Positions 7,811 to 34,575 of a DNA stretch of 64,000 nt are shown here, piece after piece (within the stretch, counting starts at the first letter, position 1; each line of letters begins with the position of its first letter). Location: IMG/VR virus record IMGVR_UViG_3300030339_000003, positions 1 to 64,000 of that record. One strand, given 5' to 3'. The translations under genes and the position numbers were made by a program. Under the pieces are notes generated by a model. That model had not been told where the DNA came from, did no database searches, and was given only the letters and a program-made list of their open reading frames with translations.

Positions 7811-7862
7811 ACTAGAGTAAATTAAGATGGGATTAATCTACTCTAGTAATGTAGGGTTGAGA
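7811..7862 (-). promoter_or_regulatory. phiKZ-type early promoter plus 5' hairpin
   Basis: TCAACCC-TACATTAC (core 7846-7853); 15-bp stem at 7811-7847. Confidence 0.7.
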
Positions 7863-7885
7863 TCTTTTGTATTACAACGTTTTAA

Positions 7886-8446
7886 TTATTTTGAATAAGG
7901 AAAATCATTCTTTTTGATTTTAACCATACGGCCATCGGGATGATGCCAAACGATACCTTCGATGTCACTATCTTTAAGGTATTCCATTATACCTTCGTAA
8001 TCACGCGGACCGTGCATTAACCAATGAGCGCCATGACGATAAAGAACATGCTCAGTTAAGTTTTCAGGATTAGGACCATGCCGCGTACCAATTTTTGGGC
8101 CGCATACTTCATACGTTCCATCTTCCGGATAATCGGACAGAGCTGCGATAGCTTCTTTAATAAACTTATCTTGACCTTTGGTAGGTAACACCCAGCCAGG
8201 CCAATGCCCAGTAACTGGATCTGGTTCAGGTTGCGCAGGAATAAAATCAGGTGGTGGTGTGCGACCAGTTTTTGCATCATAACGAATATAGACAATACCT
8301 TTTTCTATCAATATCGCCATACCATCGTATTTGCGCGTGGCAGTTCCTTCCCCGGCAATAACCCACTCGGCACCTTCACTGATTTCGTTATAAACTTTAC
8401 GATTACCTTCATAACTTCTTTTAAATAAAGATAAAATCTTTTTCAT
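7886..8446 (-). CDS. ATP-dependent RNA ligase-like nucleotidyltransferase (DUF5565/Rlig1-like)
   Basis: WVIAGEGTATRKYDG (motif I KxDG), GTYEVCG, EGIVW, KIK. Confidence 0.7.
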   Translation of the reverse strand: MKKILSLFKRSYEGNRKVYNEISEGAEWVIAGEGTATRKYDGMAILIEKGIVYIRYDAKTGRTPPPDFIPAQPEPDPVTGHWPGWVLPTKGQDKFIKEAIAALSDYPEDGTYEVCGPKIGTRHGPNPENLTEHVLYRHGAHWLMHGPRDYEGIMEYLKDSDIEGIVWHHPDGRMVKIKKNDFPYSK

Positions 8447-8455
8447 AACTGGCCC

Positions 8456-9502
8456 TTAAATAGCTACTGGTGCTTTGATAGGATCGTGATGGTTATAATT
8501 GATCAACTCAAAATCATCAATCGTGTAATCGAAGATAGAATCCTTTTTCTTAATATACATAAGCGGCTTTGCATATGGTTCACGAGTTAATTGCAACTTA
8601 ACTTGTTCCAGATGGTTTTGATAGATGTGCACATCAACACCATTGTAAACAAGTTCACCTGGCACCATGTTAACTTGCTGGGCAATCATTTGCGTAAGCA
8701 AAGCATATGAAGCGATGTTAAACGGTAAACCTAAGAAAGTGTCCGAACTACGCATGAGGAAGAAGCAGTTTAGTCGACGAGTGGGGATACCAGCGTCATC
8801 AAACTGTTTCTTTAATTTCTCAGGTTCTGCTATCTCGCCGTTTTCTGGATTAAGAAGCAACATGTGAACCACACCGAATTGATATTTTTTATGACGAAAC
8901 AGTTCAAAACGTTCGTACAATGACAATTCGGTAGTAGTGAACTGGAAATAGTTGTGACAAGGTTCTAATGCCATTTGATCTAACTGACCCACATTAATAG
9001 CACTGACATAAATACGACGGTTATCGGGATCGTTCTTTAACAAGTCAATTACTTTTTGAATCTGATTAGTGGAACGACGATAAACACACGCAGGAGGGTT
9101 GCCATTATCTTTCTGCATGTAACCTTCAAAATGGTAACCTTTGGATTCCAAATGGCATCTGATACGGTGTCCGGTATCATGTGTTATATAAGTGTCAACC
9201 CAATCGGTCCATTGTTTACCATAGACTGGACCCAAGTCACCATTTTTATCAGCCCATTCTCGCCAGATCTTAACCCCATTATCTTCCAGGTACTCAATGT
9301 TGGTTTCGCCTTTAAGGAACCAAAGCAGTTCATGGATGATTGAACGCAAATGAGTTTTCTTGGTAGTAACCAAAGGGAAACCATCTGCCAGATTAAAACG
9401 TAACATACGACCAAATACAGATAACGTGCCAGTACCAGTACGATCTGATTTAGGAGTACCGCTCGTTAATACATCTTCGAGTAATGCCAAATAGTTTTTC
9501 AT
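8456..9502 (-). CDS. thyA: Thymidylate synthase
   Basis: [49 protein letters not shown]. Confidence 0.97.
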
Positions 9503-9519
9503 TTTAAAGGTTTCCTTAA

Positions 9520-9822
9520 TTAAGCAATCATTGTTCCGAGAATATCTTTACGCAAACCCGTGGTGATTTTAAATTCACTCAGCTCATCTTTTTCTTGGTC
9601 GTAAACAAATTGTACTACTTTGATCAAAGCGTTAGGCGGGAATTTGCGTAACACATTATCAGAAATGAATTTATAATTTAAACATTTGGTTTTGGGTGTT
9701 GCTCTAAAGCGTTGGCTTATATTAACTCCTTTTGTATCTCGGATGATGATACCGGCCATATCCTTGGTAACAGAAAGATCTAATATAAGCTCAATTTCCA
9801 TTTTCTTTTTAAACATGATCAC
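9520..9822 (-). CDS. Hypothetical protein
   Basis: 100-aa ORF within the operon. Confidence 0.7.
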
Positions 9823-9823
9823 C

Positions 9824-10375
9824 TTAAAAGATTAAATTATTGCCTGGAGTGGGTTCGGGTGTCGCATCTTTAAACCCTTCCATACCTTTATTAAACAATA
9901 GTTCATTATAGGCAGTGATCTTTTGTTGGATGGATGGATAGATTTCATCCAGGTTAATGTCCATGTAAAGTTTGCCTTCCTGCAAAGCGATTAACGTTGG
10001 ACCTAATTCCATATCAATCAACAATTGGCCTTTTGGTGTACCATCGTGGTTTTTAGACGAACCCGTAGTAATTTTAACAAAGACACCTTCAATTTGTTCT
10101 GGTGTCAATTGAACTGTTTTTAAGAAATCATCAACAAGGTTATCAGCTCCTGCTTGAACTTTAGCAATGCTTTCCTCAATACGCATTACGTCAAAATCAT
10201 TATGAATGCCAAAACCCAAACACGTTGCTAAAGTAAATTCATTATTAAACTTTTTAAATGAATCTTTATTAAGTTCTAACAATTCATGTTCTGCAAGTTC
10301 AACATTCATTTGCTCGATTTCTTCGGGTGTTAACGGCAGGGCAACCTGCCGTATTAAACGTTTCTTAGTTACCAT
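9824..10375 (-). CDS. Hypothetical protein, PL[ST]xE paralog family
   Basis: RQVALPLTPEEIEQM. Confidence 0.75.
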   Translation of the reverse strand: MVTKKRLIRQVALPLTPEEIEQMNVELAEHELLELNKDSFKKFNNEFTLATCLGFGIHNDFDVMRIEESIAKVQAGADNLVDDFLKTVQLTPEQIEGVFVKITTGSSKNHDGTPKGQLLIDMELGPTLIALQEGKLYMDINLDEIYPSIQQKITAYNELLFNKGMEGFKDATPEPTPGNNLIF

Positions 10376-10376
10376 A

Positions 10377-10703
10377 TTAACTTAACCACCTTTCAAGGTC
10401 ACTTTCTTTGCGACAAACTAGCGTCTCAAAGATTTCAATTTCGTTGTAATAGTCTTCACTATCAACGCCGTGTTTACAACGATCGTAAATAGAGCCTTCG
10501 CTCATTTCTTCCCACGGAGTCCAAGGGTGTTTGGTTCCCCACTTGGGTTTGGTGTGAGTACGAGCCATGATGTTTTTATCGTGCTTACGAGCAAAAAGAA
10601 CTTTAGTAATCAGCTCTTTGGTTTTCTCATCAGCAGTAATAAACAGAACTTCAAGCTGTTCATCACTCATGTATTCTTTATCATTTAGTTTCATAATGAT
10701 CAC
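10377..10703 (-). CDS. Hypothetical protein
   Basis: 108-aa tightly packed ORF. Confidence 0.7.
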   Translation of the reverse strand: MIIMKLNDKEYMSDEQLEVLFITADEKTKELITKVLFARKHDKNIMARTHTKPKWGTKHPWTPWEEMSEGSIYDRCKHGVDSEDYYNEIEIFETLVCRKESDLERWLS

Positions 10704-11108
10704 CTAAGGTTTAATCATACGCTGCATTATTTTTACAGCCAATTGTTTATTGATAAGAGAATCCGACCCAGTATTTGAATGAGCCGTGAATTCTACTACG
10801 ATATTTTTTTGTGGATTAGGGTTAGGGTTACGTTGGACCTTTGCGCCTAAAACAATATCGGCATTTATAATCTCGTCGCCATCAACAGTGACTTTTAAGA
10901 AATTAACGTGTCGTTCACCAGTTGTCAAAAGATGAATATCTTCAAAAGTAACGGGAGGAAGATTATTAGTGCCGCTAAATTGATCGCTAATACAGTGACC
11001 GTCTTTATCGATATACAACACACCGGCGAGCTGAACACTAGCGTCAACACCTTTATATGCGCCAGCAATATCGATATCAGGTATCCCGCTTAAGTCTAAA
11101 GTTTTCAT
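10704..11108 (-). CDS. Hypothetical protein
   Basis: Start moved to ATG 11108 (MKTLDL), which abuts the exonuclease stop; the longer call overlaps that gene. Confidence 0.7.
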   Translation of the reverse strand: MKTLDLSGIPDIDIAGAYKGVDASVQLAGVLYIDKDGHCISDQFSGTNNLPPVTFEDIHLLTTGERHVNFLKVTVDGDEIINADIVLGAKVQRNPNPNPQKNIVVEFTAHSNTGSDSLINKQLAVKIMQRMIKP

Positions 11109-11109
11109 A

Positions 11110-11727
11110 TTAACGCTCGATGATTTGTTCAGTGGTGAGTTTGGCATTAGGGTCAGTAATGAACGCAAGTTGCAATCCATCACGTTGACAATCACCCAAT
11201 GCATTATGGTTAGCGAACTCCATACCGGTTTTAATGTAACCTTTGATTTCACCCGTTGCTTGGAAAATAGCAGTAGGGACGTCAAGGATTTCATTATAAC
11301 CAATTGGGTTCTTGATCTTTAATAACTTGCACGCATTATTCGTCCAAACATAATCAGCATGTGTACGACGACAGAACACGATAGGTTTGTTCGACATAAG
11401 CCATTTAAAGAACTCAGGTAATGACTTAGAAATACTGGTCGGGTTTTTTAATACTTCTGCAATTTGAGAAGCATTACGTTCACGCCACCACTTGCCTGTT
11501 GCTTTGTCAATATCAAACCCTAAGAAAAACTGCTCAGTTAAATCCAGATTAACATAGAAGTTAAGGTCAGGAATTTCCATCGCCAATTTAGTTTCTTCCA
11601 CACTGAAACGGTTAAACTTAAACCCGCCAAAGCTTAACAGACCAGCATCAGGTTGTAGAGATGCAGATTCGTAATCGATCACAGCAGTGTTCGCATTAGC
11701 AATAACTTGTTCTGTAGAAATAGACAT
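11110..11727 (-). CDS. DEDDh 3'-5' exo(ribo)nuclease (Rv2179c/DUF5051-like)
   Basis: VIDYES, WW, HAD, HNALGDC motifs. Confidence 0.8.
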   Translation of the reverse strand: MSISTEQVIANANTAVIDYESASLQPDAGLLSFGGFKFNRFSVEETKLAMEIPDLNFYVNLDLTEQFFLGFDIDKATGKWWRERNASQIAEVLKNPTSISKSLPEFFKWLMSNKPIVFCRRTHADYVWTNNACKLLKIKNPIGYNEILDVPTAIFQATGEIKGYIKTGMEFANHNALGDCQRDGLQLAFITDPNAKLTTEQIIER

Positions 11728-11765
11728 AAAGATCCTTAATAAAAGAAAGTTGCACCATATTAATA

Positions 11766-11782
11766 ATAATACAGTGTAAAAG
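11766..11782 (-). promoter_or_regulatory. Possible early promoter variant
   Basis: TTTTACAC-TGTATTAT just downstream of a terminator, as at the other early promoters. Confidence 0.4.
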
Positions 11783-11802
11783 TGTTAAAATAAAGTTTAT
11801 AC

Positions 11803-11832
11803 TAATACTCCTACCGTGAGGTAGGAGTATTA
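11803..11832. terminator. Hairpin terminator
   Basis: TAATACTCCTACC-GTGA-GGTAGGAGTATTA. Confidence 0.8.
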
Positions 11833-11844
11833 AAGTATGATCAA

Positions 11845-12270
11845 TTATTCAAAACGAGCTTTACTGTCACTCGTGTAGATTGTACCGAATTTGGTAAGCA
11901 ATTCCGTAATAGCATGAAACACATCCATGTTATCTTTGAAATTCCATTTATTGTGTTTTGCAAAATACATTACAAAGTTATCGACGTTATGGACATCATA
12001 AGTGCCGCAAATATGCCTAACGGTTTGTTCAATAACCTTTTTAACTGTGTCACGATAACCGTACACATGGTTCTTCACTTTTAAGTATTCAGAAACCAAG
12101 CACGTAATAATAGTCGGAAGACAACGCAAATCCATGTTGTCATTTTTAACTTTATCAAAGATGGTAACAATACGATCATCATTGATAGGGATATTTAATT
12201 CCATTTTGTTATTGTAATAACGGAACTTAAATTTAAAGTTGTGTAATTTACTCATAAAGCTTAACCCCAT
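11845..12270 (-). CDS. Hypothetical protein
   Basis: 141-aa ORF; start uncertain. Confidence 0.65.
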   Translation of the reverse strand: MGLSFMSKLHNFKFKFRYYNNKMELNIPINDDRIVTIFDKVKNDNMDLRCLPTIITCLVSEYLKVKNHVYGYRDTVKKVIEQTVRHICGTYDVHNVDNFVMYFAKHNKWNFKDNMDVFHAITELLTKFGTIYTSDSKARFE

Positions 12271-12278
12271 GAAAATAA

Positions 12279-12300
12279 AAGGGTAGGAAAGTCTACCCTT
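12279..12300 (-). terminator. Hairpin terminator
   Basis: AAGGGUAG-ACUUUC-CUACCCUU, then UUAUUUU. Confidence 0.65.
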
Positions 12301-12308
12301 ATTATCTG

Positions 12309-12623
12309 TTACTTATTACATGTGTTTGGTAATAAAACATAACTTGTTTGTGAATCAGTCTTAGCGATAAATGAACACCCCGTTAACTTATCATTAACTA
12401 AAACAAGATTAACATTATTACCTTTAATTTCTTCAAAACGCTGATCAACCAAATTGTCAGTTTGTTGTCGAGCTTTGTTTTCCATCGAAATTGGGTCATT
12501 ACCTTGAGACGCCCATAATACACCCATAATGATCATCGCAACCATAGTAAACATTACAATTGCTTGACGACGTACGATTAACAATCTTGCAATCCATTTC
12601 ATAGAACGATAAAATACAGACAT
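12309..12623 (-). CDS. Membrane-anchored protein with a DUF6440-like DxxTGC motif
   Basis: N-terminal TM helix AIVMFTMVAMIIMGVLW; VNDKLTGCSFI. Confidence 0.6.
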   Translation of the reverse strand: MSVFYRSMKWIARLLIVRRQAIVMFTMVAMIIMGVLWASQGNDPISMENKARQQTDNLVDQRFEEIKGNNVNLVLVNDKLTGCSFIAKTDSQTSYVLLPNTCNK

Positions 12624-12630
12624 TTAAAAC

Positions 12631-12774
12631 CTACTTAGCAAAGTTAGGAGCAAACCCATCAACCAGTTTAAAGGTCACTGCAACGACTGCTGCAATAACT
12701 GCCATAGTCACCAGAAAGTCTTGGTTTTCTTTTGGTGTTTTATTAAGTGAATTAATAATATCTTTATCGAACAT
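12631..12774 (-). CDS. Small membrane protein (47 aa)
   Basis: Manual: MFDKDIINSLNKTPKENQDFLVTMAVIAAVVAVTFKLVDGFAPNFAK; SD GGGAG; fills the gap. Confidence 0.65.
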   Translation of the reverse strand: MFDKDIINSLNKTPKENQDFLVTMAVIAAVVAVTFKLVDGFAPNFAK

Positions 12775-13318
12775 GTACAATTCTCCCTACGCCTTGTTCA
12801 TAAAGGAAATCTTCAATACGCGCATTTAGTGATTCAATCTTTTCTAAATAAGCGCCATGATCTTTAACGCGATAAATAAACCCGAATTCCCAAACTGGAT
12901 AAACTTGGAATCCTGGTGGCGCATTAAAGTTTGGTGAACCATCTTCATTAAAACACCAGTTAAGCGTTTTGGCGGCTAATGAATAACCATGGAATCCACT
13001 TTCTTTTAATAACTTACTTAAGAAATTAAAGAATGGATCGGCATTTCTCCCAGCTGCAAAGATAAAGTAAAAAGCATCATTGCGAGGTTCTAGAAACTCT
13101 TCTCTTTTATTATTTGCTGGCGCGTTCAACCATTTTTGATATTGCTCAACGATAGTGTGTCCAGAACAACTCCAAACGGTCTGAATTCCATCAATGTTAT
13201 TTAATAAACGTAAAGTGTTAATCATGCGTTCATCAATACCACGATAACCACCATCGATGATCTTTTGATTACGTAACTTTAAAATACGATACTTTTTATC
13301 ACTTACTGTATGAAACAT
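12764..13318 (-). CDS. TYW3-like protein
   Basis: IDERMINTLRLLNNIDGIQTVWSCSGH resembles TYW3 D..I..l..iN....T.sSCsGr. Confidence 0.55.
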   Translation of the reverse strand: MFHTVSDKKYRILKLRNQKIIDGGYRGIDERMINTLRLLNNIDGIQTVWSCSGHTIVEQYQKWLNAPANNKREEFLEPRNDAFYFIFAAGRNADPFFNFLSKLLKESGFHGYSLAAKTLNWCFNEDGSPNFNAPPGFQVYPVWEFGFIYRVKDHGAYLEKIESLNARIEDFLYEQGVGRIVHVR

Positions 13319-13590
13319 TAAGGGCGCTCCATTTTAAAACAAGTCCATGAATTAATAATGTGTTTGCGTACTTTATTTAATTCTTTATCTACTGATTTCC
13401 AAGAAACACCATTAGCTAATGGTTCTTGAGGAGCACCCCAGATTGTTCCCTGCGTATTATTTTGAAAAATAATATCAAAATGTTCGCAACGGTCTTCATT
13501 GGAGCGTATGATGGGTTCAATCATAACAATACTACCAAGATCAATAACAATTTCACCAATAACCGTATCGAATCCTTTAATTTGATTCAT
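13318..13590 (-). CDS. Hypothetical protein
   Basis: 90-aa ORF, TAATG-coupled. Confidence 0.7.
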   Translation of the reverse strand: MNQIKGFDTVIGEIVIDLGSIVMIEPIIRSNEDRCEHFDIIFQNNTQGTIWGAPQEPLANGVSWKSVDKELNKVRKHIINSWTCFKMERP

Positions 13591-13593
13591 AGC

Positions 13594-19691: not shown

Positions 19692-19735
19692 TTAAATAGA
19701 GTGGTTAACTACTTAAGTAATATAGGTTTAAAAAT
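19692..19735 (-). promoter_or_regulatory. phiKZ-type early promoter plus 5' hairpin
   Basis: TTTTTAAACC-TATATTAC (core 19717-19724) followed by the stem TTAAGTAG/CTATTTAA. Confidence 0.75.
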
Positions 19736-19738
19736 ATA

Positions 19739-19768
19739 TACTACTATCTCCTAACGGAGATAGTAGTA
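19739..19768. terminator. Hairpin terminator
   Basis: TACTACTATCTCC-TAAC-GGAGATAGTAGTA. Confidence 0.8.
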
Positions 19769-23678: not shown

Positions 23679-23688
23679 TTTACTACCC

Positions 23689-23738
23689 CTATGAAAATAT
23701 ATCGTGAGCTATACTTATAGATAATGTAGAACTAAAAT
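23689..23738 (-). promoter_or_regulatory. phiKZ-type early promoter plus 5' hairpin
   Basis: TTTTAGTTC-TACATTAT (core 23721-23728), then CTAT-AAGTATA/TATATTT-ATAG stem. Confidence 0.65.
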
Positions 23739-23755
23739 ACTTTATACATTAACAT

Positions 23756-23785
23756 TATACTACTAGGGTTGCCCCTAGTAGTATA
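23756..23785. terminator. Hairpin terminator
   Basis: TATACTACTAGGG-TTGC-CCCTAGTAGTATA. Confidence 0.8.
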
Positions 23786-23796
23786 TGTATTTTTTA

Positions 23797-26006: not shown

Positions 26007-26063
26007 GATAAATAAAGATAAATACTGCATCTTTATACACCTAAGTAATGTAGATCTGAAAAT
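26007..26063 (-). promoter_or_regulatory. phiKZ-type early promoter plus 5' hairpin
   Basis: TTTTCAGATC-TACATTAC (core 26045-26052), then GGTG-T-ATAAAGAT/ATCTTTAT-T-TATC. Confidence 0.7.
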
Positions 26064-26101
26064 AACTATAATCTAATTTTAAACAAATATAATAAGACGT
26101 T

Positions 26102-26133
26102 TATTATCCCTATCCTCACGGATAGGGATAATA
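26102..26133. terminator. Hairpin terminator
   Basis: TATTATCCCTATCC-TCAC-GGATAGGGATAATA. Confidence 0.8.
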
Positions 26134-27916: not shown

Positions 27917-28463
27917 GTTGGTTCCTCAAATGTTTAATGGTCTTATACATAACATTTTGATTACGCTTTTGCTTACGGTACTTTGAACTTACCTTTAAAT
28001 ACTTACGCAATCCAACAGGTAACACCAGGCCATGTTTCTTTAACACATAGTCAATAAAGATGGATCTTGACGGAGCATTATTAAAGTAACCTGTTAAACT
28101 TAAATAAGAATTAAAAGGATTACCCGAATAAAAGGTGGGCTCTTCATCAGCCACTTTATTAACTTTCAGTTCCTCAACATCAAATGCAGTAATGCCGTCG
28201 GGGAAATAAGCATCGTGTATGTAACCATCGTCAGTAATATACACGTGGAAAGGACCCACATTAATCGTGGGCGTTAATCCATAGCCAATCGCAATACGTT
28301 CTACTAATAAAGCCATGACATGACAATCCCCACTGTTAATGATTCCAGGGATTGAAAGTTTCGACTTATTACCCTCAGCGATATACAATAATTCAAATTC
28401 TTGAATTAAGCTATCAATGATCGATTTGTATAACTTTCTTTTAGGGCTCATATCCTGCGTCAA
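27888..28463 (-). CDS. Transglutaminase/papain-like Cys-His-Asp protein
   Basis: INSGDC..MA, FHVYI, IHDAYFPDG. Confidence 0.5.
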   Translation of the reverse strand: MTQDMSPKRKLYKSIIDSLIQEFELLYIAEGNKSKLSIPGIINSGDCHVMALLVERIAIGYGLTPTINVGPFHVYITDDGYIHDAYFPDGITAFDVEELKVNKVADEEPTFYSGNPFNSYLSLTGYFNNAPSRSIFIDYVLKKHGLVLPVGLRKYLKVSSKYRKQKRNQNVMYKTIKHLRNQHAKAGVHIG

Positions 28464-28947
28464 TCTCCGTTACACCAACACTTGCCGCTTTAGCAAGAAC
28501 GTCAACCATTTCATTATACTTATCGCCTGTGTGTGCTTTGACTTTGTGGAAATAGATTTTGTTTTCCTTAATCAAAGGATAAGCACGTTGCCACAAGTCC
28601 AAGTTCTTGATAGGTTTCTCTGCACCTGTTTCCCAATCAACACGTACCCAATTCTTACGCTTCCATCCATGAATCCATTTCATCAATCCATCTTTGGCGT
28701 AATTGGAATCAATATAGATGTCAAAGGTTTTGTTAGGACCAAATTCCTCTAAAGCTTTAATAACAGCTAAAAGCTCCATACGGTTATTGGTTGTCTTAAT
28801 AAACCCACCGCTTAATTTAAGTTCGGTGTTTTCATCGATAGGGATAACACAGCCCCAACCACCAGGCCCAGGATTAGGTGAAGCACTACCATCGGTATAA
28901 ACTACGATAGACTTATCTTTAGCAGGCTCTTCATATTTAGCCGTCAT
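28441..28947 (-). CDS. rnhA: Ribonuclease HI
   Basis: YTDGS..NPGPGGWG, TTNNRMEL, DS.Y, KN.DLW, VKAH..NE.VD. Confidence 0.97.
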   Translation of the reverse strand: MTAKYEEPAKDKSIVVYTDGSASPNPGPGGWGCVIPIDENTELKLSGGFIKTTNNRMELLAVIKALEEFGPNKTFDIYIDSNYAKDGLMKWIHGWKRKNWVRVDWETGAEKPIKNLDLWQRAYPLIKENKIYFHKVKAHTGDKYNEMVDVLAKAASVGVTEIDAGYEP

Positions 28948-28962
28948 AACGATCCTTATAGT

Positions 28963-28984
28963 TTAGGGGGCTTTCACCCCCTAA
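28963..28984 (-). terminator. Hairpin with GAAA loop
   Basis: UUAGGGGGU-GAAA-GCCCCCUAA. Confidence 0.65.
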
Positions 28985-28993
28985 GTTTATTGA

Positions 28994-30598
28994 TTAAAAA
29001 TCAAAACCATCTTCGCTATATGGGTGACAAACAGAATTTGCCATATGCGCAAAACGATTTTCAGGTGGTAACATCAAACGGATTTGGCGAGCATGTTCTG
29101 AAATATCAAAACGACGACCAATTGTTGAAACAACATCATCCAGAATTTGATCAGCCATCGTACCTTGAATACGGCCTTTAAACAAATCTATATTGAGGTT
29201 CTCAATAATTTGTGTGCGTAAAGTATAAAAATCGCTAGCTGGGCGAGAAGCTAATGGGGGTGGAGTCATAAATGGTCGTGGACCATTGTTGTATGGGTGA
29301 TTAATGCCCGACCCGTTATCTGGTTTATAAACAAAGATTTTGTCACCTGGGGTGTAATTAGATTTCATTACAAACCCTTCGGTACTGCGAACCGCGGTAA
29401 TTTCTTGGTTATCCGTTACGCGGAATAAGTTGATGTCAAACATAGATTGAATATCGAAATCGTACGCACCATTTAAATAAATGGCACTGTTATCAGCGGT
29501 ACGATAAGACGTGTCTTTAACCGTCAAACTTTTCGCGTCTGAATTTAACGTAATCCCTTTAAGAGAAGAATTTTGAACATCAAATAAATTCAAGAACCCT
29601 TGATAGTTAAAATAGTTAAAATTGACCACATTAGAACCAATAACGCGGAACTGATGCGTATTGATATTCACGTTTTCTAATACTGAATTTTTAATAGTGC
29701 CTTGGTGTCTTGAGTTTTCAATATTACACCCAAACAGCATACTGTTAATGATATTCAAATTCTTTACAGTATGCATTGTGTGACCAAAACGGAAATTATT
29801 TTCTTTTGGTAAACGCAAGCTGCTGTTAACTAAAAGACATTTATTTACTTTCTGATGTTCGATTGAGTTATTGCCTTTAAATGCGACGTTAACCAATTCA
29901 CTATTAACTGCCCACGTTATATTAGCAATACGGCCAGCCAACAAATCGACATCAAAATAATTCCATTTATCATGACCTTCGGTGTCAATAGTCATGGACG
30001 AGTCATTGTCTAATAAAAGAATCTGATAAACAACTTTTTGGTCGCCATCAATTTTTTGTTTTAGATTATCAACCAGAGCCGACCCTGTGTCTCTGCCGAT
30101 ACCTGGAATGGTAATGGAATAGACGTACAGATCAAATTTGCATTTGAGCGGTTGTGTGTCTTTTGGGGAATATTTTTCCCGAGCGGTTTTACTGTTTGCC
30201 AGGGATTCAAATGTCCCGAACAATCTAATAAAACTGTAGAATTCCATTCCCATCTCAATGCCGCTAACAATTGGGGTAATGGTTGCACCATTGATGACAA
30301 GTTTACTTGATTTTTCATTTTCATTCAAACGTTTTTTACGCATCCAGCCTTCGGGCATTCTGAATGATAACACTTTATCCAGTTCGAGTTCGGAAATAGC
30401 TTTGAAATTGAGTTTAGCTGTTTTGATTGACTCTTCAATAACGCCCATATCGGCTATTTTATTTTCACCAAACTTTGGTTCTGCGGTTACTTTAATTTCA
30501 GTAACAGTTTCAGCAGCAACTACTTCAACTACTGGTGAGTCAATAGTAACCTTAACTTCTTTGTCAGCAACTTTAACGATTTCTTTAGACTTAGCCAT
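28994..30598 (-). CDS. Hypothetical protein with a beta-helix-like repeat region
   Basis: Repeated I.NS.L pattern (LVNSSL, IINSML, IKNSVL, VQNSSL). Confidence 0.75.
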   Translation of the reverse strand: MAKSKEIVKVADKEVKVTIDSPVVEVVAAETVTEIKVTAEPKFGENKIADMGVIEESIKTAKLNFKAISELELDKVLSFRMPEGWMRKKRLNENEKSSKLVINGATITPIVSGIEMGMEFYSFIRLFGTFESLANSKTAREKYSPKDTQPLKCKFDLYVYSITIPGIGRDTGSALVDNLKQKIDGDQKVVYQILLLDNDSSMTIDTEGHDKWNYFDVDLLAGRIANITWAVNSELVNVAFKGNNSIEHQKVNKCLLVNSSLRLPKENNFRFGHTMHTVKNLNIINSMLFGCNIENSRHQGTIKNSVLENVNINTHQFRVIGSNVVNFNYFNYQGFLNLFDVQNSSLKGITLNSDAKSLTVKDTSYRTADNSAIYLNGAYDFDIQSMFDINLFRVTDNQEITAVRSTEGFVMKSNYTPGDKIFVYKPDNGSGINHPYNNGPRPFMTPPPLASRPASDFYTLRTQIIENLNIDLFKGRIQGTMADQILDDVVSTIGRRFDISEHARQIRLMLPPENRFAHMANSVCHPYSEDGFDF

Positions 30599-30629
30599 TT
30601 AAAAACATCCTATAAAAGTATAGTGGGTA

Positions 30630-30657
30630 ATAGGCAAGAGGTTACCCTCCCACCTAT
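30630..30657 (-). terminator. Hairpin with GUAA loop
   Basis: AUAGGUGGGAGG-GUAA-CCUCUUGCCUAU with G-U pairs on -. Confidence 0.65.
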
Positions 30658-30683
30658 AATTTTGGGTTATTAGTTTATTAAAA

Positions 30684-30938
30684 CTACGCGAAATCGCCCA
30701 GGCGCAAACCGGCATTTAGATTAGGACTTTGAAGGAAGATGTATACCTTTTCATCACCCACGGTGCGGTAATCGTGAGGGATTTCATCCAACCATTTCAT
30801 TTCCGCTCTGCTTGAAACAACAACCAAACGGGTCAATGTTTCAAAGGTAATGAATTTAGCCACAGTACCCAACTTAGAACGAACTAAATTGATATCGGCT
30901 TCTTTACCAACAAAATGAACTTCAAAATGACTACCCAT
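30684..30938 (-). CDS. Hypothetical protein
   Basis: 84 aa, overlaps the ligase stop. Confidence 0.65.
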   Translation of the reverse strand: MGSHFEVHFVGKEADINLVRSKLGTVAKFITFETLTRLVVVSSRAEMKWLDEIPHDYRTVGDEKVYIFLQSPNLNAGLRLGDFA

Positions 30939-32817
30939 TGATCTTCCTTACTATATCGTTGATGGAGATTTCATTGTTTACATAATAAACAGGAATATTT
31001 AACTTTAATGCCTGCGTAGTGGATGCAGTTTCTGTGTCACTAAACCCTACAATAACACACTCTACACCTTTAACTACTCGAGGCAGTACTTCGATATCAC
31101 TTTTCAGTAACTGCTCTGCAATGAAGTTACGCGGCGCTTCAAACTTACCCGTTAATACGACTTTCTTATAACCACGAATGAACGTATCAGGACGAATCAC
31201 TAAAGCTGTCGCAAAGCGTTCAATATAACGCACACGCTTTTTATCTGTAAATGCTTTTAACAGATACATTGTTTTAGCAGGAGTGAATGTTTTCTTAATA
31301 AGTTCATGGTCTTTAATGAACTCTAAGAACTTTTCGATATTAACACAAAGATGACTGATTTCGTCTGCGGTTGATTTGCCCACTTCTTCGATATTTAACG
31401 CGTAGATAAATTGACTCAACGTCTTTTTACGGTTTTGACGAATGATCTCGTAAAAACGTGGACCGACTTGTTCCAATTCTAAACTATAAATATCTAAAGC
31501 AGTTTTAATGAACCCACGACCAGCCCACTCGGTAATGGTTTCACGACCTACGTCTTTAATATCCAACCCTTCTTTGCCTGTTGCACGAACAATGTCATTA
31601 ATGAATTGATCCGCACAATCAGCGGTATTGTTACAGGTTAATGTTGGACCAATCAAAGACACCGGACCACCACAACACGGACATACTTCAGGTAAACGCA
31701 TGCGTGGTGTGTCGGTACGATCAATGACTTCATCCAGATGCGGAACAGAGTCGCCAGACATAACAATACGGATACGATCACCTGCACCAATCTGCAAGCC
31801 TAACAACTTACCTGCGTTAAATCCATTGGCACGTTGGCATTTAGACCCAGCAATCATTACTGGTTCGTAAATAAGAGTAGGGGTAATGCGACAACGGGTT
31901 ACAGACCATTCAACATCTTTAAACCGCGTTACACCAAACAACGTATTGTATTTAAAAGCAATAGACCATTTCATTTCATCGCCCAAACGCTGACGAGTAG
32001 ACAGTTTGTTTGCTTTCATGACATAACCATCAAAAGGTTCAACCGTATTGGGTGCTTGAGTTAACAATTCTTTTTCTGTTACCAGGCGAGGAATGTCAAA
32101 CCCTTGATCGGCAAACCAATTACGAAGTTGTACACCGCTTTCAATTTTCAATAGCGGTAACACTTTAGGGTCGATCGCATAAACACTGCACGTAATCTTA
32201 CCCTTAACGCTAAAACGATTATTTAAACTACTGCGTAACCAGCCACTGATTTGATTACGTTGTTTAAAGTCTGGAGTATTCGTTGATTCTTTAAGATCTT
32301 CGATATCCAGATAAGTAAGGTGTGCTTCTGCACGAATATCAAACTTATCTACATCTTTAAGTTGTTCAATAAAAGGCGGGATATGTTTGAAGTAACTTAA
32401 CTGATGCGTGATGTTTTCACCTTCAGTTAATGTACCTTTGGTGACCAGGTGTTTTAACTTACCGAATTCATATTGAAGTTCAAGAGCCATACCGTCTAAC
32501 TTTGTTTCAATATAAACATCATTGTCAAAAGAAGCTTTTAATTCATCGTAAGCACCAAAGTCGTACGTACGATTCAAAGAAGGAAAAGGTCTAAAATGCG
32601 GAACTCTTTTCAATTCTGCTTTATTGGAAAACACAACGGTCGCTTTTTGATCTAAGTTGTATTCCCAATTAGGGTGTTCGGCCGCTAACGTATCAAAGCG
32701 GTTCTTTAACAGATCGTATTCGGAATCACTGATGATGCTTTTGTTCTCACCCCAAAACAATCCATTGTGGTAATCCAATTGCTCTTTTAAATCTGCTAAT
32801 GTGGTAAATGTGCTCAT
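30931..32817 (-). CDS. ligA: NAD-dependent DNA ligase
   Basis: ISDSEYD, KLDG adenylation motif, DG..K, AFKY, Zn finger CPCC..C..C, C-terminal BRCT VVLTG. Confidence 0.92.
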   Translation of the reverse strand: MSTFTTLADLKEQLDYHNGLFWGENKSIISDSEYDLLKNRFDTLAAEHPNWEYNLDQKATVVFSNKAELKRVPHFRPFPSLNRTYDFGAYDELKASFDNDVYIETKLDGMALELQYEFGKLKHLVTKGTLTEGENITHQLSYFKHIPPFIEQLKDVDKFDIRAEAHLTYLDIEDLKESTNTPDFKQRNQISGWLRSSLNNRFSVKGKITCSVYAIDPKVLPLLKIESGVQLRNWFADQGFDIPRLVTEKELLTQAPNTVEPFDGYVMKANKLSTRQRLGDEMKWSIAFKYNTLFGVTRFKDVEWSVTRCRITPTLIYEPVMIAGSKCQRANGFNAGKLLGLQIGAGDRIRIVMSGDSVPHLDEVIDRTDTPRMRLPEVCPCCGGPVSLIGPTLTCNNTADCADQFINDIVRATGKEGLDIKDVGRETITEWAGRGFIKTALDIYSLELEQVGPRFYEIIRQNRKKTLSQFIYALNIEEVGKSTADEISHLCVNIEKFLEFIKDHELIKKTFTPAKTMYLLKAFTDKKRVRYIERFATALVIRPDTFIRGYKKVVLTGKFEAPRNFIAEQLLKSDIEVLPRVVKGVECVIVGFSDTETASTTQALKLNIPVYYVNNEISINDIVRKING

Positions 32818-32825
32818 GCCAACCC

Positions 32826-33482
32826 CTAGACTAACTTTTTAATATAATTATTAATATGTTCATTCAGTTTTAAAACATCTCTTGCAATGTTTTGCAAATA
32901 GAACTGAGGGAACTGATGATGCTTATCCCAAACAATCAAGTGGTCATTTTTAGGGATGACTTCTGTTTGATGGATTGGAAAGTCGTCTACCAACACATAA
33001 TGTTTATACCCTTGTGCATTCAGGTAGTCTACTTTACTTGGGTGTTCTTTAGAATTAATAACGTGAATAGATTTCCAATCAATGTCATTAAAATGTTTAT
33101 CTAAAGAATGCTTCGTGTAACGCTCACCATTGATACTGTATCCTCGATGGGTGCATACGTTCAGATTAAAGCGTGGGTCCTTGTTAATAGCCCGTAGCCA
33201 TGGCTTAAGTGCCTCATCTGGTTCTACAGTCAACATAAAGCGATCGTATTGTAAACCGTGTTCAAATACGCGCGCTTCTACTAATTTGGCGTCTTTCCCT
33301 TCAAGTGTTTTAACCGCTTTCAGGAAAGTAACATCACGGTTCATTGCGATGCCAAGAATCAAATGGTCAATCGAATCCCAAGAACTTTTGTGTTCGAGGT
33401 AATTCAACATATTGTTTCTAACATGCTTATGTGTTAAAAAAGTAAAATCATCCAGATCACAAAAGATATCAATGGGTTTCAT
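32826..33482 (-). CDS. HAD-superfamily hydrolase (5'-nucleotidase-like)
   Basis: IFCDLDD motif I, CTHRG, K, LVDD motif IV. Confidence 0.7.
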   Translation of the reverse strand: MKPIDIFCDLDDFTFLTHKHVRNNMLNYLEHKSSWDSIDHLILGIAMNRDVTFLKAVKTLEGKDAKLVEARVFEHGLQYDRFMLTVEPDEALKPWLRAINKDPRFNLNVCTHRGYSINGERYTKHSLDKHFNDIDWKSIHVINSKEHPSKVDYLNAQGYKHYVLVDDFPIHQTEVIPKNDHLIVWDKHHQFPQFYLQNIARDVLKLNEHINNYIKKLV

Positions 33483-33512
33483 AAAAAGTCCTTAAATAAA
33501 AAGACAGCATAA

Positions 33513-33542
33513 TAAGTAAAGGGGCGGCCGCCCCTTTACTTA
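33513..33542. terminator. Perfect 30-bp palindrome, probable terminator
   Basis: TAAGTAAAGGGGCGGCCGCCCCTTTACTTA. Confidence 0.75.
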
Positions 33543-33552
33543 GTGCTTAACG

Positions 33553-33819
33553 TTATTTGATTTGTTTTAACAAAGCAGGCATAATGTTTTCAACTGATGT
33601 TTGGTAGTCTATTAAAGTATTGGTAGACAGCAGACGGTAACTTACATCGTCTGGTTTAACAATAATGGAAGCAAAAATAGAGCCCATGTGTTTTAAAGAA
33701 TAAACAACCGAACCATCACCGGTGTCTTTATTTTTATAACCGGTGACCAAAGTTGTTTGACCTTCTACTAAATTCAGAGAGTCGTCTTTAAAATAGCATA
33801 GCAGTTTCAGTTCTGGCAT
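33553..33819 (-). CDS. Hypothetical protein
   Basis: 88-aa ORF. Confidence 0.65.
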   Translation of the reverse strand: MPELKLLCYFKDDSLNLVEGQTTLVTGYKNKDTGDGSVVYSLKHMGSIFASIIVKPDDVSYRLLSTNTLIDYQTSVENIMPALLKQIK

Positions 33820-34507
33820 GAGTATTACCTACTTGAAGCTTAAAGATAAGGTTGTCCATCTTAGACTGGTTCACTAAGTATGAAACTTTCTTTTTGTTGT
33901 TGTTTACCAATTGGTTCATTTTGTTACGGAATTGTTTGACAGTAGCCACTTTCCCGTTAACAGTGTACATGTTCCAATTGCCTTTGGTAAGCTTAACGTA
34001 TTTGCTAATTTTTGCGTTGTCGTTACCTTTCAATATCTTTTCGGCACCATACAAGCCAACGAACCAACTCATATACACATCGCCGTCTGATACTGCCCTT
34101 TTGGTTTTCCTTTCAAGGTAACTGCGATTTTCTGCTAAACCTGCTGCTCCGATTAATATATTGGCTCGCTTATCGTGAACAGAACTCTTAGCAGACAATC
34201 CTAAGCGCTTAGCGTGTAATTGCACATCGTTACGCCATTGGCGGTTTGTGTATTGCATTGCCCCTTTAACATTAGAATGAGGATTAATAGTGTTTTGCCC
34301 AAAACGAGATTCTTTAAGCAAAACTGCACTTACAAGTTCGGCGGATTCACCGGTGAGACTTTCGGCCTCAATAACATATTTTTCTATTTTTGCATAAGCC
34401 TTTGCATCGGCTTTTGAAAGTGGTTGAACAGAATAGCTGGCTAGTGCAGCGCCCATCCCCACCATCATTATTAACATTCCCAAAATAAAAGATTTGATCG
34501 TAGACAT
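33788..34507 (-). CDS. Lytic transglycosylase (SLT, phiKZ gp144-like catalytic domain) with signal peptide
   Basis: Sec-type N-terminus ending ALA-S; KESRF catalytic Glu, GAMQ, DVYMSWFVG. Confidence 0.8.
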   Translation of the reverse strand: MSTIKSFILGMLIMMVGMGAALASYSVQPLSKADAKAYAKIEKYVIEAESLTGESAELVSAVLLKESRFGQNTINPHSNVKGAMQYTNRQWRNDVQLHAKRLGLSAKSSVHDKRANILIGAAGLAENRSYLERKTKRAVSDGDVYMSWFVGLYGAEKILKGNDNAKISKYVKLTKGNWNMYTVNGKVATVKQFRNKMNQLVNNNKKKVSYLVNQSKMDNLIFKLQVGNTHARTETAMLF

Positions 34508-34525
34508 ACGTCCTCCGTTGTTTGA

Positions 34526-34575
34526 CCAGGTGTAACATCATAACTACTGTTACACCTAGATAATATAGGTTTATT
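34526..34575 (-). promoter_or_regulatory. phiKZ-type early promoter plus 5' hairpin
   Basis: TAAACC-TATATTAT (core 34560-34567), then 12-bp stem CTAGGTGTAACA/TGTTACACCTGG. Confidence 0.7.

What the first reader, a model, noticed from the sequence alone, without database searches (positions are those of the whole stretch)
7811..34575. Every clear early promoter is followed immediately by a sequence-variable 5' stem-loop
Seen on -: five cores at 7846-53 TACATTAC, 19717-24 TATATTAC, 23721-28 TACATTAT, 26045-52 TACATTAC and 34560-67 TATATTAT, all preceded by ANNYC. In all five a stem of about 8-15 bp overlaps or starts within 3 nt of the core end, with unrelated arm sequences and G-U pairs valid only on the transcribed strand, so structure is conserved while sequence is not. 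Known: TATATTAC is the phiKZ early promoter core read by virion RNAP, 5'-terminal hairpins block RppH/RNase E decay, and early transcription in these phages occurs inside a membrane-bound compartment. Inference: a systematic 5' structural tag for stabilising, exporting or self-marking early mRNA, or a structural promoter element.
Basis: partly seen in the sequence, partly recalled or inferred. Interest (0 to 1): 0.75.

Follow-up and report, generated by a model that had tools for sequence, protein, structure and literature searches.

The report
Terminator hairpins overlapping phage early promoters
The five early promoters of this giant phage are real, but only two or three are followed by a real hairpin, and the two strongest look like stop signals for the preceding gene built partly out of the promoter itself, not a tag on every early message.

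Summary
The window is the first 64 kb of a complete 231-kb jumbo phage that encodes multisubunit RNA polymerase homologues. A weight-matrix scan finds exactly 26 phiKZ-type early promoters, all on the minus strand. "Every promoter has a stem-loop" fails. Against shuffles, 7853 (z -6.3) and 34567 (z -3.6) are strong, 26052 is borderline (z -2.0), and 19724 and 23728 are at chance. The 5' arms are not unrelated: positions +1 to +9 are conserved promoter sequence. By homology with AR9 and phiKZ (start 6 nt after the element; position +7 is a purine in 206 of 207 promoters), transcription starts inside the 5' arm of the two strong stems. Folded from that start they vanish (-0.9 and -5.1 kcal/mol). 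Across 11 genomes and 207 promoters, pairing that uses core plus spacer occurs in 14 of 53 promoters that abut the upstream gene without a terminator, against 8 of 154 others (p = 7e-5). Best reading: these are the upstream unit's terminator or 3' hairpin, with the promoter nested in it. Separately, about 15% of early transcripts in the family carry a hairpin near the 5' end. No RNA data exist for this phage.

The parts
7839..7878 (-). Early promoter 1: -35-like element, T-rich element, core 7846-7853, 6-nt spacer, predicted start at 7839 (A).
   Evidence: PWM score 38.2. Start site predicted by homology (PMC5312081) and by the invariant purine at +7.
7811..7847 (-). Promoter-overlapping hairpin: 15-bp stem, 7-nt loop. 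The 5' arm is the last 2 nt of the core, the spacer and +7..+13. Proposed terminator or 3' hairpin of the upstream RNA-ligase-like gene.
   Evidence: -16.1 kcal/mol, z -6.3 with the core included. -0.9 kcal/mol, z +0.1 from the predicted start. Complementarity of core plus spacer to the downstream sequence: p = 0.003.
7886..8446 (-). Upstream gene (186 aa, RNA-ligase family). Its stop codon lies 32 nt before the core and no terminator lies between.
   Evidence: phrog_14301, E 5e-78.
19710..19749 (-). Early promoter 2 (core 19717-19724, predicted start 19710).
   Evidence: PWM score 34.7.
19692..19716 (-). Claimed stem 2: 8 A/U-rich pairs. Not distinguishable from chance.
   Evidence: -4.8 kcal/mol, z -0.7, 43 of 200 shuffles as good. 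No structure from the predicted start.
19739..19768 (-). Canonical terminator-like hairpin upstream of promoter 2 (13-bp perfect stem, tetraloop).
   Evidence: -20.8 kcal/mol, z -6.9.
23714..23753 (-). Early promoter 3 (core 23721-23728, predicted start 23714).
   Evidence: PWM score 32.2.
23688..23721 (-). Claimed stem 3. Not distinguishable from chance.
   Evidence: -6.3 kcal/mol, z -0.9, 36 of 200 shuffles as good.
23752..23788 (-). Canonical terminator-like hairpin upstream of promoter 3 (GCAA tetraloop).
   Evidence: -22.1 kcal/mol, z -5.7.
26038..26077 (-). Early promoter 4 (core 26045-26052, predicted start 26038).
   Evidence: PWM score 43.7.
26012..26036 (-). 5'-UTR hairpin: 9 A/U-rich pairs, nt 3-27 of the predicted transcript. 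The only candidate in the window for a genuine hairpin near the 5' end of an early mRNA.
   Evidence: -5.0 kcal/mol, z -1.8 (10 of 200 shuffles as good) from the predicted start. -8.8 kcal/mol, z -2.0 with the core included.
26102..26133 (-). Canonical terminator-like hairpin upstream of promoter 4 (14-bp stem, GUGA tetraloop).
   Evidence: -22.1 kcal/mol, z -6.5.
34553..34592 (-). Early promoter 5 (core 34560-34567, predicted start 34553). Its upstream elements lie inside the end of the SbcC/Rad50-like gene.
   Evidence: PWM score 31.4. The stop codon lies 6 nt before the core.
34526..34559 (-). Promoter-overlapping hairpin: 12-bp stem, 10-nt loop. The 5' arm runs from +1 to +12 after the core. 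Proposed terminator or 3' hairpin of the SbcC/Rad50-like gene.
   Evidence: -16.9 kcal/mol, z -3.6 with the core included. -5.1 kcal/mol, z -0.1 from the predicted start. Complementarity p = 0.01. A hairpin with different arms sits at the orthologous junction in relatives.
34574..37042 (-). Upstream gene: SbcC/Rad50-like ATPase (822 aa).
   Evidence: phrog_77, E 4e-56. Orthologues in Joad, EL and pTD1.
33788..34507 (-). First gene of the unit driven by promoter 5 (239 aa, transglycosylase-like). The same gene order is found in Erwinia phage Joad.
   Evidence: (phrog_4067, E 3e-37).

Best explanation
The finding merges three different things.

(1) The two long stems, at 7811-7847 and 34526-34559.
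- Their 5' arm is made of the end of the promoter core plus the 6-nt spacer, which lie upstream of the predicted transcription start.
- Such a hairpin can form only in RNA that reads in from the upstream gene. Those genes are RNA-ligase-like and SbcC/Rad50-like, and their stop codons lie 32 and 6 nt before the core, leaving no room for the usual terminator.
- I propose that the hairpin is the terminator, or at least the 3'-end hairpin, of the upstream transcription unit, with the early promoter nested in its 5' arm.
- Incoming polymerases transcribe both arms and stop, or leave a protected 3' end. Virion-polymerase transcripts that start at +7 lack most of the 5' arm, stay unstructured and run on.
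- The other three promoters in the window have a separate canonical terminator hairpin (-21 to -22 kcal/mol) just upstream instead.

(2) The 9-bp A/U stem after promoter 26052 lies inside the predicted transcript (nt 3-27).
- It belongs to a weaker, family-wide tendency for early transcripts to carry a hairpin in their first 1-6 nt.
- Its likely role is 5'-end protection or attenuation. This is inferred, not shown.

(3) The stems at 19724 and 23728 are chance-level.

Shown here: promoter identity, folding statistics, the association with a missing upstream terminator, and conservation of the hairpin at one junction across lineages.
Inferred: the start-site position (by homology and conservation) and the termination function.
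For: Promoter set. 26 sites with a clean score gap, all on one strand. The same extended consensus is found in EL, OBP, pTD1 and IMG/VR jumbo phages.

Start site.
- In AR9 the early element is followed by 6 N and then G(+1).
- phiKZ and phiR1-37 have a conserved start 6 nt after the element (PMC5312081).
- The element is centred near -10 (PMC7598289).
- Position +7 is G 179 / A 27 / C 1 in 207 promoters.

Folding. 7853: -16.1 (z -6.3) with the core against -0.9 (z +0.1) from +7. 34567: -16.9 (z -3.6) against -5.1 (z -0.1).

Positional profile over 156 promoters. The z-score dips only for windows starting at -6..0. Part of the signal is lost once the window starts at +6.

Association. Complementarity between core plus spacer (-7..+6) and the next 44 nt, tested against shuffles of those 44 nt, is significant in:
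- 14 of 53 promoters whose co-directional upstream gene abuts them without a terminator;
- 2 of 89 promoters with an upstream terminator;
- 6 of 65 promoters with no co-directional upstream gene.
Fisher odds ratio 6.6, p = 7e-5. Without this genome: odds ratio 6.0, p = 4e-4.
Hairpins lying wholly inside the transcript are equally frequent in all three classes, 13-15%.

Extreme cases in pTD1. The 5' arm is the core itself, with 11-12 perfect pairs from -6/-5 to +5/+6.

Within the window the split is 5 of 5. Three promoters have upstream terminators. The two without have overlapping hairpins.

The orthologous junction (SbcC/Rad50-like gene, then early promoter):
- stem from +1 here;
- stem from +1 with different arms, one compensatory pair and G-U pairs in two IMG/VR relatives;
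- stem from position 0 in pTD1 and EL;
- stem from +9 in Joad;
- a canonical terminator upstream of the promoter in FishSpeaker.

Strand. The sense strand folds better than the antisense strand, as expected for an RNA-level element.

Experiments in relatives. Termination sites immediately downstream of start sites were seen by ONT-cappable-seq in phiKZ and 201phi2-1 (PMC10914365, PMC11512511).
Against: - No transcript ends have been mapped for this phage. The only run that holds it is DNA of a 98-99% identical phage. The start site and the termination are therefore both inferred.
- The overlapping hairpins differ from the canonical terminators here. They lack a GNRA-type tetraloop, have lower G+C, and share no common 3' tail.
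- 39 of 53 abutting promoters have no such hairpin, including 141736 in this genome, so it is not obligatory.
- In Joad the hairpin at the orthologous junction lies wholly inside the predicted transcript. It would also be present in the promoter's own RNA.
- My gene calls for the relatives are simple ORF calls, so some promoters may be put in the wrong class.
Confidence: 0.6

Rival explanations
1. Every early mRNA starts with a sequence-variable stem-loop that stabilises it, marks it as self, or helps export it from the early infection compartment.
For: - Structure is enriched from the predicted start site across the family: 30 of 207 promoters at p<=0.05, binomial 2e-7.
- 25 of 26 significant hairpins begin 0-5 nt from the predicted +1, and 12 begin at nt 1.
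- Stem starts are in excess at +7..+12: 49 observed against 19 expected.
- In two relatives (G007, G008), about 40-55% of early leaders (about 10 of 18 and 8-10 of 22, by eye) show GAAUAG followed by a variable hairpin.
- The sense strand folds better than the antisense strand.
- 5' stem-loops are known to protect bacterial and T7 mRNAs (general knowledge).
Against: - The feature is not systematic: 2 of 26 promoters in this genome (Fisher 0.13-0.21), 1 of 32 in phiKZ, 1 of 16 in EL.
- The two flagship stems need nucleotides upstream of the predicted start and vanish without them.
- Their occurrence tracks the absence of an upstream terminator, which a 5' tag does not predict.
- Several leader hairpins leave 5 unpaired nucleotides at the 5' end.
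Confidence: 0.12
2. The hairpins that lie inside the leader are conditional (premature) terminators of the promoter's own transcripts. They would give short 5'-UTR RNAs, as reported for phiKZ and 201phi2-1.
For: Termination sites immediately downstream of start sites, and short 5'-UTR-derived RNAs, are reported in PMC10914365 and PMC11512511. Leader hairpins such as 26012-36 lie between the start site and the ribosome-binding site.
Against: - This cannot apply to 7853 or 34567 if transcription starts at +7, because the 5' arm would be missing from the RNA.
- The leader stems in this genome are weak, -2 to -7 kcal/mol.
- No U-tract or TTAT tail is evident.
Confidence: 0.1
3. A DNA-level element. 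The dyad symmetry spanning the start site extrudes as a hairpin or cruciform and helps the virion polymerase melt or recognise the promoter, by analogy with N4. Alternatively it is an operator for a dimeric regulator.
For: - The 5' arms coincide with the region expected to melt (core end to +2 of the start site).
- The antisense strand also folds better than shuffles (Fisher 2e-9).
- Some stems are perfect Watson-Crick (pTD1).
- The consensus itself has a weak internal dyad.
Against: - The sense strand is significantly more stable than the antisense strand, and G-U pairs sit in the stems.
- Most promoters, including the highest-scoring ones, have no such dyad.
- Loops of 7-36 nt and variable arm lengths do not suit an operator.
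- The element appears only where an upstream terminator is missing, which a promoter element would not explain.
Confidence: 0.07
4. Chance. A/T-rich leaders next to a partly palindromic consensus give occasional stems with no function.
For: Two of the five claimed stems are at chance level. The consensus TAC-YTAR-GTA is itself palindromic. Median z-scores are modest.
Against: - 0 of 200 and 1 of 200 shuffles match the two strong stems.
- Combined Fisher p = 2e-17 over 156 promoters.
- The dip in z-score is confined to one position range.
- The class-specific association holds.
- The hairpin is conserved with changed arms at an orthologous junction.
Confidence: 0.05

Closest known systems
phiKZ / AR9-type early promoters read by the virion multisubunit RNA polymerase (Ceyssens 2014 as cited in PMC8244752; PMC5312081; PMC7598289)
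   Same: - The TATATTAC-type A/T-rich element near -10 and T-rich and further elements near -20 and -30.
- A conserved purine 7 nt after the element.
- About 20-30 copies per genome, on one strand, in front of operons of small genes.
- The genome encodes multisubunit polymerase homologues.
   Different: Here, and in the EL, pTD1 and OBP group, the spacer and the first transcribed bases (YTARGT-GTA) are also conserved. No transcript mapping exists for this phage.
Stem-loop terminators of phiKZ-like phages, and termination sites found immediately downstream of promoters (PMC10914365, PMC11512511)
   Same: A stable RNA hairpin at the end of a co-directional gene, without a long U-tract. In those phages, termination sites were mapped right after start sites.
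   Different: Those sites were read as premature termination of the promoter's own transcript. Here the 5' arm is the promoter itself, so the hairpin should form only in read-through RNA from upstream. Loop type and G+C content also differ from the canonical terminators of this genome.
5'-terminal stabilising stem-loops (E. coli ompA leader, T7 gene 10 leader; general knowledge)
   Same: A hairpin at or within a few nucleotides of the 5' end of an mRNA, variable in sequence. This fits 26012-26036 and about 15% of early leaders in the family.
   Different: It is present on a minority of transcripts, is often weak, and sometimes follows 5 unpaired nucleotides. It is absent from the predicted transcripts of the two strongest sites.
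Lambda sib retroregulation (general knowledge)
   Same: The logic is the same: one hairpin is complete in transcripts from one origin and incomplete in transcripts from another, so the two RNAs have different fates.
   Different: In lambda the difference lies at the 3' end (termination against read-through), and the complete hairpin is an RNase III site. Here the difference lies at the 5' end, set by where transcription starts. No nuclease is implicated.
N4 virion RNA polymerase hairpin promoters (PMC4496689)
   Same: A virion-carried polymerase, with early promoters associated with inverted repeats.
   Different: N4 uses a 5-7 bp stem with a 3-nt loop in DNA upstream of the start site, read by a single-subunit enzyme. 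Here the stems are 9-15 bp with 7-10 nt loops, span or follow the start site, show sense-strand G-U pairs, and are absent from most promoters.

Membership tests
phiKZ-type (virion polymerase) early promoter | Conserved A/T-rich element of TATATTAC type, with further conserved blocks about 10 and 20 nt upstream. | tested here: met
   PWM consensus ATTACA .. TTTCAgaCC TATATTAC. 26 sites score 26-49 and the next best scores 8.
phiKZ-type (virion polymerase) early promoter | Conserved purine start site 6 nt downstream of the element. | tested here: inconclusive
   The sequence requirement is met: +7 is G20/A6 here and G179/A27/C1 in 207 promoters. The 5' ends themselves could not be mapped, because no RNA run exists.
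phiKZ-type (virion polymerase) early promoter | The genome encodes multisubunit RNA polymerase homologues. | tested here: met
   PF00623 match above the cut-off at 125193-125372. Weak PF00562 match at 111616-111726.
phiKZ-type (virion polymerase) early promoter | Transcribed early, independently of protein synthesis, by the virion enzyme. | not testable with these tools
   Needs infection time-course RNA data.
5'-terminal stabilising stem-loop | The whole stem lies inside the transcript, within about 0-4 nt of its 5' end. | tested here: not met
   This applies to 7853 and 34567 with the predicted start site. 6-8 nt of the 5' arm are upstream of +7, and the truncated RNA folds at -0.9 and -5.1 kcal/mol, z about 0. 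The feature is met for 26052, whose stem starts at nt 3.
5'-terminal stabilising stem-loop | Present on the class of mRNAs as a rule. | tested here: not met
   2 of 26 here, 30 of 207 in the family, 1 of 32 in phiKZ.
5'-terminal stabilising stem-loop | Lengthens the mRNA half-life. | not testable with these tools
   Needs decay measurements with stem mutants.
Hairpin terminator of the upstream transcription unit | A stable RNA hairpin shortly after the stop codon of a co-directional gene. | tested here: met
   The hairpins begin 38 nt (7853) and 14 nt (34567) after the stop codons. Energies are -16.1 and -16.9 kcal/mol.
Hairpin terminator of the upstream transcription unit | Mutually exclusive with a separate terminator at the same junction. 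| tested here: met
   14 of 53 against 2 of 89 and 6 of 65; p = 7e-5. The split is 5 of 5 in the window.
Hairpin terminator of the upstream transcription unit | The same hairpin style and 3' tail as the canonical terminators of this genome (G+C-rich stem, tetraloop, TA-rich tail). | tested here: not met
   Loops are 7 and 10 nt, the stems are A/T-rich, and the tails (taataagg, tcaaacaa) share no motif.
Hairpin terminator of the upstream transcription unit | Transcript 3' ends map to the hairpin. | not testable with these tools
   No RNA data exist for this phage.
N4-type DNA hairpin promoter | A short stem (5-7 bp) with a 3-nt loop upstream of the start site, required at every early promoter. 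| tested here: not met
   Stems are 9-15 bp with 7-10 nt loops, span or follow the start site, and are absent from most promoters.

The most novel reading that the evidence does not exclude
Two linked readings remain open.

(a) In this phage family an early promoter can be written into the 5' arm of the preceding unit's terminator. One stretch of DNA would then say 'stop' to polymerases arriving from upstream and 'start' to the virion polymerase. The hairpin would exist only in read-through RNA. It might also mark late read-through copies of early genes for a different fate.

(b) The hairpins that begin exactly at the predicted +1 on a third or more of early leaders in some genera (the GAAUAG-plus-hairpin leaders of G007 and G008) would be a real, lineage-variable 5' tag of virion-polymerase transcripts. 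It would serve stability or passage out of the early infection vesicle.

The probability given is for (b), the more novel of the two.
Probability: 0.2. Interest if true: 0.65.

Novelty: new variant of a known kind. Interest (0 to 1): 0.4.

Why it matters
Early transcription of nucleus-forming jumbo phages is carried out by an injected polymerase whose promoter rules are known only as a sequence logo.

- If terminator hairpins are routinely built from the promoter core and spacer, termination sites mapped "just downstream of promoters" in phiKZ and 201phi2-1 may have been misread. They may belong to upstream transcripts, not to premature termination of the promoter's own RNA.
- Operon maps and 5'-UTR small-RNA lists for these phages would then need rechecking.
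- The arrangement is also a compact design: an insulator that the promoter's own transcripts do not see.
- The weaker signal of hairpins at the 5' end gives a defined set of leaders for testing mRNA protection in a system where the phage also interferes with the host degradosome.
- For the scan itself, the lesson is that a striking stem next to a promoter has to be placed relative to the start site and to the neighbouring gene before it is called a 5' tag.

Tried and rejected
RNA evidence.
- Two searches for sequencing runs found only DNA holders (peat, biofilm and food metagenomes).
- One run of unknown kind, X3, proved on laying to be DNA of a 98-99% identical phage, with flat depth and no transcript ends.

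Literature.
- Supplementary start-site tables of the phiKZ and 201phi2-1 papers are not held.
- The original phiKZ transcription paper is not held.
- The start-site offset therefore rests on PMC5312081 and PMC7598289.

Other searches.
- Megablast of the window against phage records found no match.
- Rfam gave no hit in the window.
- A relative search with the 193-aa early protein found nothing.

Analyses I discarded.
- A first test for an upstream terminator used the best hairpin in 120 nt upstream. It flagged 137 of 156 promoters because it included coding sequence. I replaced it with the gap between the stop codon and the promoter.
- A comparison of hairpin frequency at junctions with and without promoters was contaminated by uncalled small ORFs in long gaps. 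I do not use it.
- In the histogram of stem starts, the peaks at -7 and -5 reflect the conserved consensus pairing with itself. I do not count them as independent events.
- PWM training for phiKZ and Joad drifted at a low threshold. I kept only the top, single-strand sets of 32 and 19 promoters.

Full report
WHAT THE WINDOW IS.
The window is bases 1-64000 of a complete 231,366-bp virus genome with direct terminal repeats and 39.5% G+C. Of 242 simple ORF calls, 206 are on the minus strand.
- It encodes homologues of multisubunit RNA polymerase subunits (PF00623 above the cut-off, a weak PF00562 match).
- Its SbcC/Rad50-like protein is 31-38% identical to those of Erwinia phages Joad and RisingSun, Shewanella phage FishSpeaker, Pseudomonas phage EL and Vibrio phage pTD1.
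- It is therefore a jumbo phage of the phiKZ/EL kind, with no close relative among deposited phages.

THE PROMOTERS ARE REAL.
The bare 8-mer TAYATTAY is no more frequent than chance (18 matches against 21 expected). The extended motif is what defines the class.
- A weight matrix trained on the sites converges on exactly 26 sites in the genome, all on the minus strand. They score 26-49 and the next best site scores 8.
- The consensus runs from an ATTACA block and a T-rich block, through CC-TATATTAC, into conserved downstream bases: YTARGT, then a purine, then TA.
- The same extended motif is found in EL, OBP, pTD1 and many uncultured jumbo-phage contigs. Each of ten further genomes has its own clean set of 5 to 32 such promoters.

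WHERE TRANSCRIPTION STARTS.
No RNA data exist for this phage. Public runs that hold it are DNA, and the one ambiguous run is DNA of a 98-99% identical phage. The start site therefore rests on three lines of evidence.
- In AR9 the early element is followed by six bases and then G(+1). phiKZ and phiR1-37 have a conserved start 6 nt after the element (PMC5312081).
- The A/T-rich element is centred near -10 (PMC7598289). Further conserved blocks lie near -20 and -30 (PMC11512511), which is where the T-rich and ATTACA blocks fall here.
- The seventh base after the core is G in 20 and A in 6 of the 26 promoters. It is G179/A27/C1 in 207 promoters from 11 genomes, phiKZ included.
The predicted starts in the window are 7839, 19710, 23714, 26038 and 34553.

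THE FIVE STEMS, ONE BY ONE.

| Promoter | Folded with the core | Folded from the predicted start |
|---|---|---|
| 7853 | 15-bp stem, -16.1 kcal/mol, z -6.3 | -0.9 kcal/mol, z +0.1 |
| 34567 | 12-bp stem, -16.9 kcal/mol, z -3.6 | -5.1 kcal/mol, z -0.1 |
| 26052 | 9 A/U-rich pairs starting 9 nt after the core, -8.8 kcal/mol, z -2.0 | -5.0 kcal/mol, z -1.8 |
| 19724 | -4.8 kcal/mol, z -0.7 | no structure |
| 23728 | -6.3 kcal/mol, z -0.9 | -2.4 kcal/mol, z +0.2 |

So two stems are strong, one is borderline and two are chance-level. The two strong ones depend on bases upstream of the predicted start.

- In this genome, 7-8 of 26 promoters have a significant fold in the window -3..+42 (Fisher 1e-4 to 3e-4). 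From the predicted start only 2 of 26 do, which is not significant.
- Over 156 promoters of nine genomes, the mean z-score dips only for windows starting at -6..0 from the core end (mean z about -1; 22-27% of promoters below -2). It is back at baseline (about 4% below -2) by +18.
- Over 207 promoters, 43 are significant from -3 and 30 from the predicted start.
- phiKZ shows essentially nothing from the start site (1 of 32).
- The sense strand folds better than the antisense strand (paired p = 8e-4). The signal therefore behaves like RNA structure.
The enrichment is real but covers a fifth to a third of promoters.

WHAT THE CORE-OVERLAPPING STEMS ARE.
For each promoter I tested whether core plus spacer (-7..+6) is complementary to the next 44 nt, shuffling only those 44 nt. 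I split the promoters by what lies upstream.

| What lies upstream | Significant promoters |
|---|---|
| Co-directional gene, with a terminator-like hairpin in the gap | 2 of 89 |
| No co-directional gene nearby | 6 of 65 |
| Co-directional gene ending next to the promoter (median gap 14 nt), no hairpin between | 14 of 53 |

- Fisher odds ratio 6.6, p = 7e-5. Leaving this genome out gives odds ratio 6.0, p = 4e-4.
- Hairpins lying wholly inside the predicted transcript are equally common in the three classes (13-15%).
- In pTD1 two such stems use almost the whole core as the 5' arm (11-12 perfect pairs). They cannot be in the promoter's own RNA.
- In the window the rule holds 5 of 5. Promoters 19724, 23728 and 26052 each have a canonical hairpin (-20.8 to -22.1 kcal/mol, tetraloop) just upstream. 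7853 and 34567 have stop codons 32 and 6 nt before the core, no upstream hairpin, and the overlapping stem instead.

ONE JUNCTION FOLLOWED ACROSS LINEAGES.
The junction is the SbcC/Rad50-like gene, then an early promoter, then (here and in Joad) a transglycosylase-like gene. The other lineages were matched by the SbcC/Rad50-like gene and the promoter.

| Genome | Hairpin at the junction |
|---|---|
| This genome | Stem from +1 |
| Two IMG/VR relatives (about 63% protein identity) | 14-bp stem from +1, different arms, one compensatory pair, G-U pairs |
| pTD1 | Stem from position 0 |
| EL | Stem from position 0 (weak in EL) |
| Joad | 11-bp stem from +9 |
| FishSpeaker | Ordinary terminator in front of the promoter |

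The hairpin belongs to the gene junction, and its position relative to the promoter floats.

MECHANISM PROPOSED.
- RNA arriving from the upstream gene contains both arms and folds. The polymerase then terminates, or the 3' end is protected.
- RNA started by the virion polymerase at +7 lacks most of the 5' arm, does not fold, and continues into the early operon.
- Shown here: the statistics, the association and the conservation.
- Inferred: the start site and the act of termination.
- Against it: these stems do not look like the genome's canonical terminators (longer loops, lower G+C, no shared tail). Most abutting promoters have none. The Joad stem lies wholly inside the transcript.

THE SECOND, WEAKER PHENOMENON.
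- Hairpins inside the predicted transcript are modestly enriched: 30 of 207 promoters, binomial 2e-7.
- They sit at its very beginning. 25 of 26 significant ones start 0-5 nt from +1, and 12 start at nt 1.
- Stem starts at +7..+12 number 49 against 19 expected.
- In two uncultured relatives, about 40-55% of leaders by eye read GAAUAG followed by a variable 6-9 bp hairpin.
- In this genome about nine leaders have small A/U-rich stems of this kind, 26012-26036 among them. Individually they are weak.
The function could be 5'-end protection, or attenuation as proposed for 5'-UTR termination in phiKZ and 201phi2-1 (PMC10914365, PMC11512511). It is untested.

WHAT IS KNOWN.
- The papers I could search describe the early promoter logos, stem-loop terminators, and termination sites immediately after start sites (PMC8244752, PMC10914365, PMC11512511, PMC5312081, PMC7598289).
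- A 2026 review (PMC13282480) contains neither 'hairpin' nor 'stem-loop' anywhere in its text.
- I found no description of terminators built from the promoter core, nor of an enrichment of 5'-terminal hairpins on early leaders.
- That is an absence in a limited library, not proof of novelty.

VERDICT.
The interpretation as a universal 5' tag is not.
- The most likely reading of the two striking stems is a terminator of the upstream unit with the promoter nested in it (confidence about 0.6).
- This is a new variant of known parts, of moderate interest. It can be tested with existing long-read transcript data from related phages.

Noticed in passing
window 19739-19768, 23752-23788, 26102-26133; genome 142702-142740, 170074-170130 and others: Canonical terminator-like hairpins have long perfect stems (13-16 bp) with GNRA-like tetraloops (GCAA, GUGA, GAAA). 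They sit 15-50 nt upstream of early promoters. One version (ACTCCTACCC-loop-GGGTAGGAGT) recurs at several places in the genome. The T-rich tail of the terminator often runs into the T-rich block of the promoter, forming compact terminator-promoter modules.
   Followed up: partly
genome 122982, 142651, 220003 (outside the window, minus strand): Three early leaders share nearly the same small hairpin (AAUAAACA, 4-nt loop, UGUUUAUU) at nt 4-25 of the predicted transcript, upstream of ORFs of 115-145 aa. This is probably a duplicated promoter-leader-gene cassette, so these are not independent examples.
   Followed up: no
all 207 promoters; window cores 7846-53, 19717-24, 23721-28, 26045-52, 34560-67: The promoter consensus is weakly self-complementary. 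TATATT of the core can pair with the conserved RGTGTA at +4..+9, and TAC-YTAR-GTA is palindromic. This gives spurious peaks of 6-bp stems starting at core positions 1 and 3 (27 and 18 promoters against 3 expected).
   Followed up: partly
IMG/VR genomes G007 (222,670 bp) and G008 (238,014 bp): Early leaders begin with a conserved GAAUAG followed by a compact hairpin whose stem sequence varies from promoter to promoter. This holds for about 10 of 18 and 8-10 of 22 promoters (judged by eye). It is the clearest case in the family of a sequence-variable hairpin near the 5' end.
   Followed up: partly
window 32500-37500: A public 2025 run (coded X3, organism A) holds DNA of a phage 98-99% identical to this one. 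Differences are mostly transitions, and many of the listed ones are spaced at multiples of three within the SbcC/Rad50-like gene. Peat, biofilm and food metagenomes also hold parts of the genome.
   Followed up: partly
window 33788-34507 and 7886-8446: The first gene behind early promoter 5 is transglycosylase-like (phrog_4067). The same gene order, SbcC/Rad50-like gene then transglycosylase, is found in Erwinia phage Joad. The gene ending just before promoter 1 belongs to an RNA-ligase family (phrog_14301).
   Followed up: partly
genome 112990 (minus strand): One early promoter lies in front of a 699-aa ORF that carries the weak RNA polymerase beta-type match (PF00562, 111616-111726). This fits the rule that non-virion polymerase subunits are early genes.
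   Followed up: no
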